Of a stretch of 64,000 nt of DNA, positions 3,715-64,000 are shown piece by piece. The position numbers and the translations under genes were made by a program. A model generated the notes under the pieces. It was not told the origin of the DNA and ran no database searches. It saw only the letters and a list, made by a program, of their open reading frames with translations. How positions within the stretch are numbered: the first letter of the stretch is position 1; every line of letters begins with the position of its first letter. The stretch is from the NCBI RefSeq assembly GCF_006345805.1, contig NC_043022.1:5828001-5892000 (forward strand), read 5' to 3'. This DNA comes from Octopus sinensis (Eukaryota).

Positions 3715-4650
3715 TGCATGGGAGATGCAGATGCAAAGTGGCTGAGTTCCTTTCAAGCATTGGGCCTTACGGAGGCAAAGTGGCTGAGTTCCTTTCAAGC
3801 ATTGGGCCTTACGGAGGCAAAGTGGCTGAGTTCCTTTCAAGCATTGGGCCTTACGGAGGCAAAGTGGCTGAGTTCCTTTCAAGCATTAGGCCTTATGGAG
3901 GCAAAGTGGCTGAGTTCCTTTCAAGCATTGGGCCTTACGGAGGCAAAGTGGCTGAGTTCCTTTCAAGCATTGGGCCTTACGGAGGCAAAGTGGCTGAGTT
4001 CCTTTCAAGCATTGGGCCTTACGGAGGCAAAGTGGCTGAGTTCCTTTCAAGCATTGGGCCTTACGGAGGCAAAGTGGCTGAGTTCCTTTTGAGTATTGGG
4101 CCTTACAGAGGCAAAGTGGCTGAGTTCCTTTCAAGCATTGGGCCTTATGGAGGCAAAGTGGCTGGGTTCCTTTCAAGCATTGGGCCTTACGGAGGCAAAG
4201 TGGCTGAGTTCCTTTCAAGCATTGGGCCTTACGGAGGCAAAGTGGCTGAGTTCCTTTCAAGCATTGGGCCTTACGGAGGCAAAGTGGCTGAGTTCCTTTT
4301 GAGTATTGGGCTTCACGGAGGCAATGACCAAGACCTTTGACATTATGTCGTGCTTGAGAAGAAGACCCAGGAAGCTGAGCAAAATCACAGTCGTGGCAGA
4401 TATCGGTGTCACACACATCGGCACCTGTGCCAGTCGCACGTAGATGCACCCTGGTGTCATGCAAATGGCACCCGTGCTGGTGGCATGTGAAAGTACCCTT
4501 TACACTCTCAAACTGGGTGGCGTTTGGGAGGGCATCCAGCTGTAGAAAACCATGCCAAATCAGACAGGAGTCTGGTGCAGCCTTCCAGCATGCCAGCCCA
4601 GTCAAACTATCCAACCCATGCCAGCATGGACAACAGACATTAAACGATGC

Positions 4651-10207: not shown

Positions 10208-10425
10208 AAGGCAATGAGCTGGCAGAGCCATTAGCATGCCGTACGAAATGCTTAGTGGTATTTCACCTGTCTTTACGTTCTGGGTTCAAATTCTGCTGCA
10301 GTCCATTTTGCCTTTCATCCTTCCAGGGTCGATAAATTAAATACCAGTGAAACACTGGGGTCAACGTGATTTATTGTCCCCTTCCCCACAAAAATCAAAA
10401 CCTTGTGCCTATAGTAGCAAGAATT
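10208..10425 (+). mobile_element. SINE family A (short-tail variant A2) ending in (ATT)n
   Basis: Similarity to 191-425; different 3' tail (ccttgtgcctatagtag..). Confidence 0.8.
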
Positions 10426-11296: not shown

Positions 11297-11512
11297 AAGG
11301 CAGTGAGCTGGCAGAAATGTTAGCACGCCAGGCAAAATACTTAGTGGTATTTCATCTGTCCTTACATTCTGCGTTCAAATTCTGCCAAGGTCGACTTTGC
11401 CTTTCATCCTTTTGGGGTTGATAAATTAGGAACCAGTTGTGTACTGGGGTCAATCTAATCAACTGGCCTCCTCCCCCAAAATTTCGTGCCTTATACCTAG
11501 AGTAGAAAAGAT
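11297..11512 (+). mobile_element. SINE family A (A2)
   Basis: Same head, central domain and tail as the 10208 copy. Confidence 0.85.
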
Positions 11513-14244: not shown

Positions 14245-14384
14245 TTAATGACTTGTAAAGATGTATTTCGTTATGCAACCCTAACATACTACAAAGTATA
14301 TAAAATGTTTTTTTTATAAGCCAATAGCATGTCCTTCTGTGTTAGCAGTGCATTTTACAACACTTATGGTTATCATCTTTGTTA

Positions 14385-14975
14385 TGATTTCATCTTCCTT
14401 GGCTCCAAAATAAATCGAGATGGTGACTGCACTCCAGAAATAAGACGGCGGATAGTACTAGGCAGAGAGGCTATGATCAGCATGAGTAGGGTCTGGAAGA
14501 GTAGAGACATCAGACTCACTACCAAATGCAGATTGGTGAATGCAATTGTCTTCCCAGTAGCAACATATGGATGCGAGACCTGGACACTAAATAAAGCTGA
14601 CCAGAAGAGAATTATGCATTCGAGCTTTGGTGTTGGAGAAGACTTTTACAGATTCCATGGACAGCGAGGCTCACCAATGGAGAAGTTCTTAAGCAGATCA
14701 GGCCGAAAATGTCGCTAGAAGCTAGGATCACCAGCATAGATGGCATATCTGGTCATAATAGCAGAGAAAATCCCTGGAGAAGGACATCATGCTCGGAATG
14801 GTCAGTGCAAGAGAGGAAGAGGCTGACCAAGAACCGCTGGCTGACACAATCAAGAGTGATACCAGAATGGACATAGCCAATCTGAAAGAAGCGACCCAGG
14901 ATAGAACTGACTGGAGGACACTGATCCAACGAGTGACCGAGAGTCGACTTCGACTGAGCGGATAGATAGATAGAT
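14385..14975 (+). mobile_element. RTE-BovB-like LINE, 3' fragment (post-RT C-terminal region), with frameshifts and an (ATAG)n tail
   Basis: DFIFLGSKINRDGDCTPEIRRRIVLGR...VFPVATYGCETWT...FELWCWRRLLQIPWTAR parallels BovB DFIFLGSKITADGDCSHEIKRR...FELWCWRRLLRVPWTAR. Confidence 0.9.
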
Positions 14976-27957: not shown

Positions 27958-28345
27958 ACGTTCTGAGTTCAAAACCCGCCGAGGTCGACTTTGCCTTTCA
28001 TCCTTTCGGGGTCGATAAATTAAGTACCTATTTCTTTATTACCCACAAGGGGCTAAACATAGAGGGAACAAACAAGGACAGACATAGGTATTAAGTCGAT
28101 TACATCGACCCCAGTGCGTAACTGGTACTTAATTTATCGACCCCGAAAGGATGAAAGGCAAAGTCGACCTCGGCGGAATTTGAACTCACAACGTAACGAC
28201 AGACGAAATACCGCTAAGCATTTCGCCCGGCGTGCTAACGATAAATTAAGTACCAGTTACACACTGGGGTCGATGTAATCGACTCAATCCGTTAGTCTGT
28301 CCTTGTTTGTCCCCTCTGTGTTTAGCCCCTTGTGGGCAATAAAGA
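27958..28345 (+). mobile_element. SINE A1 host copy interrupted by an antisense A1 insertion
   Basis: Host sequence resumes after the duplicated cgataaattaagtacc. Confidence 0.85.
28029..28238 (-). mobile_element. Young SINE A1 inserted antisense into SINE A
   Basis: Flanking direct repeat cgataaattaagtacc at 28013-28028 and 28239-28254. Confidence 0.9.
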
Positions 28346-28789
28346 AACAGATACCTTTGAGAGTCACATATTCTGTACAAAGAATTCAAGTGTGCTGCTT
28401 GAAAACGCACTGCTAGAGTAATGAATGGGGAAAGCTTGGTCTGCAATGTTTGCAGTTGTGTAAGTTTGCCAAGAGCGGGGCTCGTTAGTCACCAATGGAG
28501 CCGCAGGTGTAAAGCATAAGGTAGTCTTGAGTGCACAATGTTCTAAAGGGCAGTAACGGTTATCCTTGGTCACAAGTGGACAGCCATCATCATATATGTG
28601 TGTGTAAGTGTGTGTGTGTGAGAGTGTGTGTGTGAGAGTGTGTGTGAGAGTGTGTGTGTGAGAGTGTGTGTGTGAGAGTGTGTGTGTGAGAGTGTGTGTG
28701 TGAGAGTGTGTGTGTGAGAGCGAGTGTGTGAGAGTGTGTGTGTGAGAGTGTGTGTGAGAGTGTGTGTGTGAGTGTGTGTATACACACAC

Positions 28790-39316: not shown

Positions 39317-39416
39317 NNNNNNNNNNNNNNNNNNNNNNNNNNNNNNNNNNNNNNNNNNNNNNNNNNNNNNNNNNNNNNNNNNNNNNNNNNNNNNNNNNNN
39401 NNNNNNNNNNNNNNNN
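39317..39416. other. Assembly gap (100 N)
   Basis: Run of N. Confidence 1.
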
Positions 39417-40089: not shown

Positions 40090-40345
40090 ATATTGTTATA
40101 TTTCGGAATGGTCATATTGCCAGTTTAGCCAATAAAAACACACGCACTATATATTTGGTGTTATTTTGCTTCAGTGATATTTATTTTTTACATTAATCTT
40201 AATCTTATTTCGGCCAAATATATAGTGCGTGTGTTTTTATTGGCTAAACTGGCAATATGACCATTCCGAAATATAACAATATCTGTTTCAACACACGACT
40301 TCACATAAAAAATCTTGCACAACAAATATTTAAACGTATATATAT
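40090..40345 (-). mobile_element. TA-flanked fold-back element with perfect 69-bp arms (40090-40158 / 40214-40282)
   Basis: Exact reverse complement arms; second copy in opposite orientation at 61700-61950. Confidence 0.9.
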
Positions 40346-40559
40346 GTATATACATACACACATAGACACATGCATGTGTGTGTGTGTGTGTGTATGAAGT
40401 CTAGACATTTTTGTGTGGGTCCATAAAAACATGCAGAAAATGTCTGAGAATGTGTGTGTGTGTGTGTGTGTGATAGGGAGCAACATGAGGTTGGATGTTA
40501 TTGGAAAGGAAAAGTGGAAGGAACGGAAGGAGGGAAGAGAAGCGAAACAAACAACAAGA

Positions 40560-41145
40560 CTGGATCCAACTGACAACGGTCAATAAACGAGAGAGCGTTG
40601 TGTTGGCTGGCAGCACCTCACTGCAACAGTCTTTGACAGTCAAACACGTCTCCTCCTCCTCCTCCACACTGTTGTGCCTGCATTCTTCTCTCTCTCTCTC
40701 TCTCTCCTCTCGTTCTCCCGTTCCCACCCAGCCACCCACCCCTTCCCACCAGTTACATATTTCGACTGTTGCCTTCTCTCCGCTGCTATTGTCATTGTCA
40801 GCCAGCAGTAGTGCTACCTCCGCTGCCGACAACGCCGCCGCCACCACCACCACTGCCTCTGTGATGCTCAGTACCGCTGCAGCTACTGCACATCCTACTG
40901 CTGCTTCTGTTGATACTACTACTACTACTACTGCTGCTGCTGCCAACCAACGGAATGGACATTCCCTTACAACACAGTCTCCCGAGCAGGTGGCTGTCTG
41001 CTTAGGAATGTCGGCATCTTCGACTGGGTGCAGTCTGCTCTCTATGACAACCACACTGACTTCCTTGTCGAGAGAATACCTCCAGCACTGGTGACACTCT
41101 CTTCCTATCTCTATATCCGCCCATTTAGCCACCCTGACACCACAG
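40560..41145 (+). other. Putative first/5' exon of an unidentified + strand gene (start uncertain)
   Basis: Non-repeat, GC/CpG-enriched island ending in the strong donor CAG|GTAAGC at 41145/41146; no ATG-initiated ORF crosses the donor. Confidence 0.5.
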
Positions 41146-41647
41146 GTAAGCAAACTTTCTAACCGTGTTCTCACACACCCCACCAAACACCAACACCACC
41201 ACCTTCACCACCTCCACGTTTCTCTATCAACAAATAACACACACACACACATCACGGTAAATAAGAAATATTAGTCACCTAAACACATACTGCTTCAATT
41301 CTTGACTCACCTCTTTCCTTATACTCTCTCTCTCTCTCTCTCTCTCGCTCTCTCTGTGATGGTCATGGTGGGAGGGATGGTGGCGGCGTTGATTCCGATG
41401 CGATCCAAATTAACAATGGCATTCCTTTCTTCTCTTTATCTATAGATGTGGAAATTAACGTGCAAACTCCGATGATGTGCACACTCAAATGCTGGCATAT
41501 TTTACACGCACACACATATACACATGCACACATGCATATGTATATATATATACATATAATATATACACACATGCACATATATATTTATGAAAGTATGCTT
41601 GTATAATAAATGTTTATATGTAACTATATTTGCATGTGTGTGTGTAT

Positions 41648-53979: not shown

Positions 53980-54306
53980 CAAGGCAGTGAGCTGGCAGAA
54001 TCCTTAGCTTGCTGGATGAAATGCTTATCGGTATCTCATCCGTCACTGCGCTCTGAGTTCAAATTCCACCAAGGTTGACTTTGCCTTTCATCTCTTCAGG
54101 GTCTAATTAAGTACCAGTGAAACATTGGGGTCAATGTAATCGACTAATCCCTTTCCCCAAAGACCTTGTGCCCCTCAGTAGAAAGGATCATTATTATCAT
54201 TATCATCATTATTATTATCATTATCATTATTATCATTATTATTATTATTATATTATTATTATTATTATTATTTTATTATTATTATTATTTTATTATTATT
54301 GTTATT
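53980..54306 (+). mobile_element. SINE family A2 plus (ATT)n tail
   Basis: Similarity to other A copies. Confidence 0.8.
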
Positions 54307-58288: not shown

Positions 58289-58625
58289 AAGGCAGCAAGC
58301 TTAGCAGAATGGTTAGGGTGCCAGGCAAAAGTCTTAGCGGCATTTCATCTGGCCTTTCAAGGTCAATAAAATAAGTACCTATTTCTTTATTACCCACAAG
58401 GGGCTAAACATAGAAGGAACAAACAAGGACAGACATAGGTATTAAGTCGATTACATCGACCCCAGTGCATAACTGGTACTTAATTTATCGACCCCGAAAG
58501 GATGAAAGGCAAAGTCGACCTCGGCGGAATTTGAACTCAATAAAATAAGTACCAGTCATACACTGGGGTCAATGTAACCAACTTAGTCCTCTCCTGAACT
58601 TGCTGGCCTTCTACCAAAATTTGAA
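58289..58625 (+). mobile_element. Older SINE A host interrupted by an antisense A1 insertion
   Basis: Host resumes after the duplicated tcaataaaataagtacc. Confidence 0.8.
58380..58536 (-). mobile_element. Young 5'-truncated SINE A1 inserted antisense into SINE A
   Basis: Direct repeat tcaataaaataagtacc at 58363-58379 and 58537-58553; almost identical to the insert at 28029. Confidence 0.9.
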
Positions 58626-60107
58626 ACAATATTGAGAACATATGCAAAATTATAACTGCACATTATATGCACCATTATATGCACAGGTATGTTTTATAAG
58701 CATTCCTATTCATACCTACATGTGTATATGTATATACAGGTATATATATATGTATATGTAGGTATGTATATTTAACCCGTAGTCTGCGTATATCTGAAGA
58801 TGCAACAACTGTGCACAGTATATGCATGCATGCATGCATACATACATGCACACAGACGCACGCACGCATGTGCATGAACAGAGCTAGCAATTTTCACATT
58901 CCATCACTCTTACTTTCAACACTGCCGCCGCCCAACCACCCCACCCCCCACCACCAGTTATTGATTTCTTGTTATTTATTTTCCGTCTTTCAAACGTTCC
59001 ATTCCACACTTCGCCTTTCCCCCCCCTCCCTCCCTCCTCCACCCCCTCCCTTTCACTCATCCTCACCCACCCACCACCACCACCACCGCCGCCGCCACCA
59101 CCATTCCACCGTCAACCTTTCACGTAAACAACTACTATACGTATCTCCTCGTTAACCTCATGTGACTAATTACCAACAATGGAGCTCAATTTTATTATTA
59201 ACTCAAATTTCTCAAATTCCCATTTTCAAACTGTTTTGCCAAACACTCTCTGTCGGTGCCACAGCGTTTGCCAAAAATTGGCTGCAAACGTTTCTCATAT
59301 CAGAAATCTTCCATTAAAGTTCAACCATTGAACACAACAACAACAACAGCAACAACAACGGCAACTTTAAGTCCTGCAGTTTCTGTTTGTTTATTCCTGT
59401 TTAATGTTTTTTTTTCTTCCCTTTTCACAAAATCTAAAAGAGACGTAGAAGCCACGATGAACGATGATGATGATGATTGTGATGGCAATTGTGTTTCTTG
59501 TGTAGTTTGCATTTTAACTGAAAATAAAATTCAAAGCCAAACCTGTCTGCACCTTAGCCAGGTGCTACCATTGTAATACATCCATCTATTAATTTAATTC
59601 GTTTAAATTGTTTACAAAGATGCAGTGGAGCAGTGACAAAGAGTACTTAGGTGGTGCTGTTGCCGTTTACTTAAATTGCTAACGATAAAAGGAATCTATC
59701 TAATTTTGGTTTAACTACATTTTAATTAATAATTATAATCAGGTTAAGAAGTGTATTGTAAAGTTTGCAACCAGATTTTATTTGAAAGTTCTTTAATCCA
59801 TTCTTGTAATGTTGTATAAAAGTTACAGGTGTTGTGTATGTGACTGTTCGCTTATCTTGTTGATTGGTTCCATTATGAGATGTTGGCCATACTGGAGCAC
59901 CATCTTTCAAGGTTGTTGATTGTTGTTTATAACAAACCCAGGACTTAGTTATTCTGATGTTAAGTTTATTGATCTCTATTTATCTGATGGTTGAGTCAAA
60001 TTATTTTTGGAGAGTGAATTGTCTTTAGTGATGTAAATATAATTAACACTGGTAGGAGCTTCAGTCCGCACACACACACACTGTGTGTGTGTGTGCATGA
60101 GTGGGGG

Positions 60108-60972: not shown

Positions 60973-61202
60973 ATGGCAAGCTGGCAGAAACGTTAGCACG
61001 CCAGGCGAAATGCTTAGCGGTATTTCGTCTGCCGTTACGTTCTGAGTTCAAATTCCGCCGAGGTCAACTTTGCCTTTTATCCTTTCGGGGTCGATAAATT
61101 AAGTACCAGTTACACACTGGGGTCGATGTAATCAACTTCATCTGTTTGTCTGTCCTTGTTTTTCCCCTCTGTGTTTAGCCCCTTGTGGGTAATAAAGAAA
61201 CA
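60973..61202 (+). mobile_element. SINE A1, full length, with TSD
   Basis: 14-bp TSD aatatttaattttg at 60959-60972 and 61203-61216. Confidence 0.92.
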
Positions 61203-61374
61203 AATATTTAATTTTGTGGTTCAGTACAAAGATGTCTGATCTGCGAATATTTGTTCTTTGAAAGAATCCAGTTTTGTCATTAATAAATTGCTTCGTTGTA
61301 ATTTTTTAATTTTTGTCTTCATCTCATTTGAATATATTTTACTATAATATTGATTTTTTTTCTGTCTTTTCTAG

Positions 61375-61446
61375 GTAAGTTCATCTTTGAAATTATTTTA
61401 CACTCACTTCTTTAAGTCTAAGATGTGGACAACGAGACGATCAGAG
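61375..61446 (+). other. Putative 72-nt exon starting with a donor consensus (candidate recursive-splicing exon); contains an ATG at 61423 (MWTTRRSE)
   Basis: gatttttttttctgtcttttctag|GTAAGT acceptor and GAG|gtaaaa donor; open in phase 0 (VSSSLKLFYTHFFKSKMWTTRRSE). Confidence 0.55.
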
Positions 61447-61659
61447 GTAAAACAAAATCCATTTTCATTTTATACTCCCTGAATGCAGGCATATATATAC
61501 ATGTACTTATATACATTTATATATATTACGGAGATATACTTGCATAGCAAGTGACCTGATCTGAGATCATGTGCTGGAATGAAAACAATTGCAGCATGGA
61601 AGGTGTTTATAAGCCATTTAAGAAACACACAAAAACCGTTAGATTCACTTCAACATATA

Positions 61660-61701: not shown

Positions 61702-61950
61702 CGTTTAAATATTTGTTGTGCAAGATTTTTTATGTGAAGTCGTGTGTTGAAACAGATATTGTTGTATTTAGGAATGGTCATTTTGCCAGTTTAGCCAATA
61801 GGAGTGTGACGAAAGAACTCTGGCCGAAATAAGATTAAGATTAATGTAAAAAATAAATAACACTGAAGCAAAGTAACACCAAATATATAGTGCGTGTGTT
61901 TTTATTGGCTAAACTGGCAAAATGACCATTCCTAAATACAACAATATATA
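61700..61950 (+). mobile_element. Second copy of the TA-flanked fold-back element
   Basis: Reverse complement of 40090-40345, with shorter mutually perfect arms. Confidence 0.88.
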
Positions 61951-63919: not shown

Positions 63920-64000
63920 TATATACATTTGCATGCATCTATAGATATATACATATACCAGAGTAAGCACTTAATTGTGAAACAAGGTAGGAAAAAATAG

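What the first reader, a model, noticed from the sequence alone, without database searches (positions are those of the whole stretch)
61351..61452. Candidate recursive splice site (AG|GTAAGT) with a downstream RS-exon in a ~20 kb intron
Seen: a long pyrimidine tract plus ctAG directly abuts a perfect GTAAGT donor at 61374/61375, and a second donor (GAG|gtaaaa) lies 72 nt downstream. This is the architecture of ratchet points/recursive sites with short cryptic exons described in long introns of Drosophila and vertebrate neuronal genes (established). Unusually, this exon is frame-open and carries an ATG (MWTTRRSE), so the choice between the two donors could decide whether a start codon is included. 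I am not aware of recursive splicing being documented in cephalopods.
Basis: partly seen in the sequence, partly recalled or inferred. Interest (0 to 1): 0.75.

Follow-up and report, generated by a model that had tools for sequence, protein, structure and literature searches.

The report
Recursive-splice-like motif, use unproven
A textbook back-to-back splice acceptor/donor motif really sits at 61374/61375. A motif this good is expected by chance hundreds to a thousand times in a genome of this size. No transcript or cross-species evidence could be obtained to show it is ever used.

Summary
An 18/19-pyrimidine tract plus TAG (AG at 61373-61374) abuts GTAAGT (61375-61380). GAG|GTAAAA follows at 61446/61447. 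The 72 nt between them are an open frame with an ATG (MWTTRRSE).

The junction is the best of 381 AGGT sites in the window. Y8-AGGTRAGT is expected only about 0.02 times per 64-kb window. That rate still gives roughly 600-1000 chance sites in a 2-3 Gb genome.

The supporting details carry little information. About 46% of random positions have an equally good donor within 30-250 nt, and a 24-codon open frame with an ATG is common.

I could not test whether the site lies in a plus-strand intron. The only hints are a strong donor at 41146, a slight T>A skew, and fewer polyadenylation hexamers on the plus strand.

No transcript, annotation or cephalopod genome was reachable. The protein searches were negative, but a control search showed the database barely covers this organism.

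Best reading: an unused chance pseudo-site (about 0.65). A real recursive site is about 0.17, and an ordinary exon starting with GTAAGT about 0.08. Interest is low until RNA-seq or conservation data exist.

The parts
61348..61354 (+). Candidate branch-point heptamer TATTGAT (YNYURAY). The branch A is at 61353, 21 nt upstream of the AG. A second candidate, tactataa, lies at 61340-61347.
   Evidence: Read directly; matched to the consensus from general knowledge; not tested.
61272..61372 (+). AG-free zone of 101 nt upstream of the acceptor.
   Evidence: Read directly. The last upstream AG is at 61270-61271.
61354..61372 (+). Polypyrimidine tract, 18 of 19 pyrimidines.
   Evidence: With my approximate matrix the 3' splice-site score ranks 8th of 3539 AG on the plus strand.
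61373..61380 (+). AG|GTAAGT: juxtaposed acceptor and consensus donor. This is the candidate recursive site; the junction is at 61374/61375.
   Evidence: It is the only AGGTAAGT in the window on either strand. It is the top of 381 AGGT sites by juxtaposed score. Y8-AGGTRAGT is expected 0.02 times per window.
61375..61446 (+). 72-nt interval, the putative RS-exon. The frame is open (VSSSLKLFYTHFFKSKMWTTRRSE) and the ATG is at 61423-61425.
   Evidence: No protein in the 5.8-billion-sequence set shares three 5-mers with its translation. That is weak evidence because the database hardly covers this organism.
61447..61452 (+). Second donor-like site, GAG|GTAAAA. It lacks G at +5.
   Evidence: Score 5.9 bits, rank 238 of 4715 GT sites. 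46% of random positions have an equal or better donor within 30-250 nt.
41143..41151 (+). If it were spliced to 61375 it would recreate CAG|GTAAGT.
   Evidence: Third-best donor score on the plus strand. All three frames are closed or lack an ATG before it, so any exon here would be non-coding. The exon itself is not verified (one search found no hit).
60979..61214 (+). SINE-type repeat copy ending about 160 nt upstream of the site. This is context only. The site itself lies in DNA that is unique within the window (61215-61490).

Best explanation
The site is most likely a pseudo-splice site. A strong-looking acceptor and a consensus donor have come to lie side by side by chance in T-rich, repeat-rich non-coding DNA. 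It is not spliced at a meaningful level. The downstream 'exon', its open frame and its ATG are incidental. What is shown: the motif, its rank in the window, and its chance expectation. What is inferred: that it is unused.
For: - Chance rate: the dinucleotide-shuffle expectation for Y8-AGGTRAGT is 0.02 per 64-kb window. The tail of the juxtaposed score gives about the same, z = 3.8 over 381 AGGT sites. That means roughly 600-1000 chance sites in a 2-3 Gb genome.
- Published counts of efficient recursive sites are far smaller: 197 in Drosophila and 10 in human, as cited in PMC6224609. They are described as rare in mouse brain (PMC8797253 abstract).
- The core AGGTRAGT is not enriched in the window: 4 against 5.1 expected.
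- The downstream donor is uninformative: rank 238, and 46% of random positions do as well.
- The plus strand holds 5 exon-like acceptor/donor pairs at these thresholds, and the minus strand 2.
- No protein contains the exon's translation.
- The window shows no convincing coding exon, and no gene spanning the site could be demonstrated.
Against: - The junction is far ahead of the runner-up in the window, 13.7 against 8.0 bits.
- After joining to ...CAG it would give CAG|GUAAGU. By established U1 snRNA complementarity this pairs perfectly with the U1 5' end.
- There is a 101-nt AG-free zone and a plausible branch point.
- The site lies in DNA that is unique within the window, not in a repeat.
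- The presumed upstream donor at 41146 is the third strongest on the strand.
- After masking tandem repeats, 41146-61374 shows T>A skew on the plus strand (-0.049, against +0.041 upstream).
- The same interval has 29 AATAAA/ATTAAA hexamers on the plus strand against 56 on the minus strand. Both this and the skew are weakly consistent with plus-strand transcription.
- The negative protein searches weigh little. A LINE fragment used as a control found only 29 hits, the best at 80% identity.
Confidence: 0.65

Rival explanations
1. It is a genuine recursive splice site (ratchet point) with a cryptic RS-exon. The exon 61375-61446 is first defined by the 61374 acceptor and the 61447 donor. Exon 1 (...CAG, 41145) is then ligated to 61375. 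The regenerated CAG|GTAAGT outcompetes the weaker GAG|GTAAAA, so the 72 nt leave with the downstream intron segment. The long intron is thereby removed in two steps, and the mRNA keeps no trace.
For: - It matches the defining motif: juxtaposed 3'ss and 5'ss around AG/GT (PMC6110457).
- It is the top-ranked AGGT in the window and rare per window.
- The downstream donor lies 72 nt away. Most fly recursive sites have a second 5'ss less than 100 nt downstream (PMC6224609).
- The regenerated donor scores 12.7 bits and the downstream one 5.9 bits. That is the relation under which donor competition gives skipping (PMC8605326).
- Strand-asymmetry hints favour plus-strand transcription.
Against: - There is no RNA or conservation evidence of any kind.
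- The gene, exon 1 and the intron are all assumed.
- Chance sites probably outnumber real ones unless cephalopods are fly-like.
- The upstream segment is only 20 kb, whereas fly recursive sites occur mostly in introns >40 kb and near intron midpoints. The total intron length here is unknown because the window ends at 64000.
- The second donor has no evidential value.
Confidence: 0.17
2. It is an ordinary constitutive or alternative exon 2 (61375-61446) that follows a non-coding first exon. It carries the start codon (MWTTRRSE...) or an upstream ATG, and it merely happens to begin with GTAAGT. This would be an 'annotated RS-exon' in the sense of Blazquez et al. 2018. Its inclusion depends on repression of the regenerated donor.
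For: - The acceptor is strong, rank 8 of 3539.
- The ATG has A at -3 (aagATGt) and the frame is open to the donor, phase 0.
- No frame of the presumed exon 1 reads through its donor with an ATG, which fits a 5'UTR exon followed by a start-codon exon.
- Hundreds of annotated exons that regenerate a 5'ss exist in deuterostomes.
Against: - No protein among 5.8 billion cluster representatives shares three 5-mers with the exon's translation, which includes the four words of MWTTRRSE. This is weak given the poor coverage of this organism.
- The donor GTAAAA is mediocre.
- By my rough estimate (inference), real exons beginning with GTRAGT behind an 8-pyrimidine run would number fewer than 100 per genome, against hundreds of chance sites.
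Confidence: 0.08
3. It is a sporadically used cryptic or decoy exon inside a transcribed intron. The splice sites are recognised at noise level and yield rare NMD-prone or uORF-bearing isoforms, with no selected function.
For: Strong-looking sites in a possibly transcribed region. This is the general behaviour of pseudoexons (established knowledge).
Against: It has the same lack of RNA data. Without expression data it cannot be distinguished from the best explanation.
Confidence: 0.07

Closest known systems
Drosophila ratchet points / intronic recursive splice sites (Ubx, kuz, Bx; Hatton 1998, Burnette 2005 and Duff 2015 from my own knowledge; Pai 2018 PMC6110457; Joseph 2021 PMC8605326)
   Same: A long pyrimidine tract plus YAG is directly fused to GTAAGT, and a second 5' splice site lies <100 nt downstream. 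The regenerated donor is stronger than the downstream one.
   Different: The fly sites are supported by junction reads, saw-tooth coverage and lariats. They show about twofold higher conservation than control AGGT motifs, and they sit mostly in introns >40 kb near the midpoint. None of that is available here. The host intron is not demonstrated, and the taxon is outside any group where recursive splicing has been reported.
Vertebrate RS-exons in long neuronal genes (Sibley et al. 2015, from my own knowledge and as cited in PMC6224609)
   Same: The RS-exon is defined first, then two 5' splice sites compete. Inclusion of the cryptic exon can change the transcript's fate.
   Different: Only about ten efficient sites are known in human and mouse. 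They lie in very long first introns and are conserved. Here there is no evidence of gene identity, intron size or conservation.
Annotated RS-exons repressed by the exon junction complex (Blazquez et al. 2018, PMC6224609)
   Same: The exon's first bases (GTAAGT) would regenerate a strong 5' splice site after ligation to ...CAG.
   Different: Those exons are present in mature mRNAs. Inclusion of 61375-61446 in any mRNA is not shown.
Pseudoexons / decoy splice sites in long introns
   Same: The acceptor and donor look good, the exon length is plausible, and there is no evidence of use. Such pairs are frequent: 5 on the plus strand of this window at the same thresholds.
   Different: The abutting consensus donor makes this one rarer, at about 0.02 per window.

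Membership tests
Recursive splice site (ratchet point) | Juxtaposed 3' splice site (pyrimidine tract, YAG) and 5' splice site (GTRAGT) around a central AG|GT | tested here: met
   18/19 pyrimidines, TAG|GTAAGT, best of 381 AGGT sites in the window.
Recursive splice site (ratchet point) | Lies in the sense strand of a long intron of a transcribed gene | tested here: inconclusive
   No annotation or transcript could be retrieved. There are only indirect hints: a strong donor at 41146, T>A skew of -0.049, and 29 against 56 poly(A) hexamers, plus against minus. The window ends 2.6 kb downstream, so the total intron length is unknown.
Recursive splice site (ratchet point) | RNA evidence of stepwise removal: exon-to-RS junction reads, saw-tooth nascent coverage, lariats starting at the RS donor | not testable with these tools
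   No RNA-seq access.
Recursive splice site (ratchet point) | Motif conserved above the flanking intron and above control AGGT sites | not testable with these tools
   No cephalopod genome is reachable. Exact-pattern scans of metagenome and prokaryote genome contigs found nothing.
Recursive splice site with cryptic RS-exon | A second 5' splice site within about 100 nt downstream that defines the RS-exon and is weaker than the regenerated donor | tested here: met
   GAG|GTAAAA lies 72 nt downstream and scores 5.9 bits against 12.7 for CAG|GTAAGT. The feature is uninformative, because 46% of random positions have as good a donor within 30-250 nt.
Annotated RS-exon (EJC-repressed type) | The exon is present in mature mRNA or in an annotated CDS | tested here: inconclusive
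   No protein shares three 5-mers with the exon's translation. The control search shows the database hardly contains this organism.
Annotated RS-exon (EJC-repressed type) | The exon-exon junction regenerates a 5' splice site scoring like canonical donors | tested here: met
   CAG + GTAAGT = 12.7 bits, above every genomic donor in the window. This is conditional on the unverified exon ending at 41145.

The most novel reading that the evidence does not exclude
The site is a working recursive splice site in a cephalopod long intron. It would be the first documented outside insects and vertebrates. Its cryptic RS-exon carries an ATG, so the competition between the regenerated CAG|GTAAGT and the weaker GAG|GTAAAA would decide whether an upstream or alternative start codon enters the mRNA.
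Probability: 0.15. Interest if true: 0.55.

Novelty: not a real feature. Interest (0 to 1): 0.2.

Why it matters
If it were used, it would extend recursive splicing to lophotrochozoans. It would also suggest that large cephalopod genes with long introns rely on stepwise intron removal, and that a cryptic exon can gate a start codon.

One motif cannot carry that claim. The informative experiment is genome-wide: sense against antisense enrichment of the motif in long introns, plus nascent RNA-seq. As it stands, this is a sequence look-alike of a known element, with an expected chance background of hundreds of copies per genome.

Tried and rejected
1. Exact look-up of a nearby 52-aa ORF, to fetch orthologous contigs: not on record.
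2. Protein search with a chimeric 52-aa query (exon-1 tail + 72-nt exon + read-through). It was meant to catch spliced transcripts, annotated proteins or genomic ORF calls. No candidate was found.
3. Protein search with the 199-aa ORF of the presumed exon 1: no hit.
4. Control search with a LINE reverse-transcriptase fragment (14320-14715): only 29 hits, the best at 80% identity, from a Logan run and metagenomes, none from an annotated genome. The database therefore does not cover this organism, the negatives in 2 and 3 are weak, and the taxon could not be confirmed.
5. Rfam and tRNA scans of the window: nothing.
Not pursued, since single short exons rarely score.
7. CpG observed/expected around the presumed exon 1: not island-like (0.57 against a median of 0.42).
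8. GTAAGT strand excess (28 against 9): explained by GT microsatellites and a repeat family, so it is not evidence of transcription.
9. Self-BLAST: the site is not part of any repeat present elsewhere in the window. An origin from a repeated element was therefore rejected, as far as one window can show.
10. Exact-pattern scans of metagenome and prokaryote genome contigs: no hits.
11. Literature string search for the SINE sequence: no hits.
12. A minus-strand donor-like site at 41310 next to a (GA)n run was considered as the start of a divergent gene. It was judged a chance match.

Full report
**Observation**

The sequence is as described.
- A pyrimidine tract at 61354-61372 (18 of 19 pyrimidines) is followed by AG at 61373-61374 and directly by GTAAGT at 61375-61380.
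- GAG|GTAAAA lies at 61446/61447.
- The 72 nt between translate without a stop as VSSSLKLFYTHFFKSKMWTTRRSE, with the ATG at 61423.
- Upstream there is a YNYURAY-type heptamer, TATTGAT (A at 61353), and a 101-nt stretch without any AG (61272-61372).

**Is it more than chance?**

- The core AGGTRAGT is not enriched: 4 matches on both strands against 5.1 expected from dinucleotide-preserving shuffles.
- Requiring eight pyrimidines before it leaves only this site, against 0.02 expected; 2 of 100 shuffles had a match.
- With approximate metazoan splice-site matrices (written from memory, so ranks matter more than bits), the acceptor ranks 8th of 3539 plus-strand AGs. The donor ranks 7th of 4715 plus-strand GTs.
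- A juxtaposed intronic score puts the site first of 381 AGGT sites, 13.7 against 8.0 bits, z = 3.8. That again implies about 0.02 per window.
- So the site stands out within one window. At that rate, however, a 2-3 Gb genome would hold about 600-1000 such sites by chance.

The other details add nothing.
- The 61447 donor ranks 238th, and 46% of random positions have one as good within 30-250 nt.
- An open 24-codon frame with an ATG is commonplace.

**Surroundings**

- The window is repeat-rich animal DNA. About 25% is tandem repeats. There are many copies of a SINE-type element, one ending at 61214, about 160 nt upstream of the site.
- It also holds a decayed LINE reverse-transcriptase fragment at 14.3-15.0 kb and a 100-N gap at 39317-39416.
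- A MITE-like element with perfect 45-bp inverted ends lies at 61756-61947, with a related copy at 40090-40375.
- The candidate site and its 'exon' (61215-61490) match nothing else in the window, so they are not part of a repeat that recurs within it.
- No Rfam family or tRNA was found.
- No convincing coding exon is visible.

**Is it inside a plus-strand intron?**

This could not be established.
- The presumed exon 1 (about 40.5-41.1 kb) has a donor that ranks 3rd on the strand. It is unique sequence.
- No reading frame with an ATG runs through that donor. At best it is a non-coding first exon.
- Its CpG content is unremarkable.
- After masking tandem repeats, AT skew changes from +0.041 (1-40400) to -0.049 (41146-61374).
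- AATAAA/ATTAAA hexamers in 41146-61374 number 29 on the plus strand against 56 on the minus strand.
- Both are what sense-strand intron sequence tends to show, but they are weak and partly the same signal.
- The apparent plus-strand excess of GTAAGT (28 against 9) comes from GT microsatellites and a repeat.

**External evidence**

- The only route to eukaryotic data was the protein collection.
- A chimeric query was designed to catch an exon1-exon2 spliced ORF, any CDS containing the 72-nt exon (including the four 5-mers of MWTTRRSE), or a genomic read-through ORF. It found no candidate.
- The 199-aa ORF of the presumed exon 1 found nothing.
- An exact look-up of a neighbouring ORF found nothing.
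- A control with the LINE fragment returned only 29 hits. The best was 80% identical, from a Logan run and metagenome assemblies, with no annotated-genome protein.
- That control shows the collection barely covers this organism. The SINE resembles octopus SINEs as I recall them, but that is memory, not a test.
- Exact-pattern scans of metagenome and prokaryotic genome contigs were empty.

**Comparison with what is known**

[quoted passage not shown] In flies they occur in most introns >40 kb, tend to lie near intron midpoints, and are about twice as conserved as control AGGT motifs (PMC6110457).
- Most fly sites have a second 5' splice site <100 nt downstream that defines a cryptic RS-exon. 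Efficient intronic sites number 197 in Drosophila and 10 in human.
- Hundreds of ordinary annotated exons in deuterostomes also regenerate a donor and are kept in the mRNA by the exon junction complex (PMC6224609).
- Competition between the two donors determines RS-exon inclusion (PMC8605326).
- The present site meets the motif criterion and the downstream-donor criterion. All criteria that separate used sites from look-alikes are untestable here.
- No paper in the library combines recursive splicing with octopus. The single paper mentioning cephalopods does so incidentally.

**Weighing**

- Chance sites occur at about 0.02 per window.
- If cephalopods resembled vertebrates, real sites of this strength would be about 0.001 per window or fewer (my estimate from the published counts).
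- If cephalopods resembled flies scaled to a genome full of long introns, perhaps 0.02-0.05 per window.
- Giving the fly-like scenario about one chance in four or five (my judgement) yields about 0.15-0.2 for a real recursive site.
- An ordinary exon beginning with GTAAGT gets about 0.08. By my rough estimate, fewer than 100 such exons with this tract are expected per genome.
- Noise-level cryptic use gets about 0.07, and an unused pseudo-site about 0.65.

**Mechanism if real (inferred)**

1. Exon definition across 61374-61447.
2. Ligation of ...CAG (41145) to G61375.
3. Regeneration of CAG|GUAAGU, which by established U1 complementarity pairs perfectly with U1 and scores 12.7 bits against 5.9 for GAG|GUAAAA. 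The 72 nt are therefore normally removed with the downstream segment.
4. Occasional use of the weaker donor would insert 72 nt carrying an ATG in good context (A at -3). This would give an upstream ORF or an alternative N-terminus, depending on the unknown next exon.

**Verdict**

The most probable reading is a chance pseudo-site. The finding is of low interest until RNA-seq or comparative data are brought to bear. The cheapest decisive computation is a genome-wide count of the motif in long introns, sense against antisense.

Noticed in passing
window 61756-61947 and 40090-40375: A MITE-like element with perfect 45-bp terminal inverted repeats (61756-61800 / 61903-61947). A related copy, about 88% identical, lies just upstream of the presumed exon 1. 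Both are flanked by TA/GT microsatellites.
   Followed up: partly
window 60979-61214; also 199-420, 10217-10370, 11306-11464, 28017-28353, 53990-54145, 58368-58584: Many copies (74-93% identical) of a roughly 230-bp SINE-type repeat, in both orientations. ARAGORN finds no tRNA in them.
   Followed up: partly
window 14320-14962 (+): A frameshifted C-terminal fragment of a LINE reverse transcriptase. The best database relative is only 80% identical (Logan run ERR11630394). This shows the protein collection barely covers this organism.
   Followed up: partly
window 3733-4324: A 42-bp minisatellite with 14 copies at 96% match. It is open in several frames on both strands and is not a gene.
   Followed up: no
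window ~40400 (boundary between 1-40400 and 41146-61374): After masking tandem repeats, AT skew switches sign from +0.041 to -0.049. Poly(A)-signal hexamers go from 66 plus / 53 minus upstream to 29 plus / 56 minus downstream. This would fit divergent transcription from about 40.5-41.4 kb, but it is weak.
   Followed up: partly
window 41305-41312 (-) and 41311-41400 (-): A strong donor-like GAG|GTGAGT on the minus strand follows a (GA)n run and a cccaccATGacc motif. It could be the first exon of a minus-strand gene, or chance.
   Followed up: no
window 39317-39416: A run of exactly 100 N, which is an assembly gap about 1.1 kb upstream of the presumed exon 1.
   Followed up: no
window 58900-59562 (+): A C-rich, CpG-richer unique segment (CpG observed/expected 0.72) that ends in CAG|GTGCTA at 59561/59562. 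It resembles the presumed exon 1 in composition and could be an alternative first exon 1.8 kb upstream of the site. It has no sequence similarity to 40.4-41.4 kb.
   Followed up: partly
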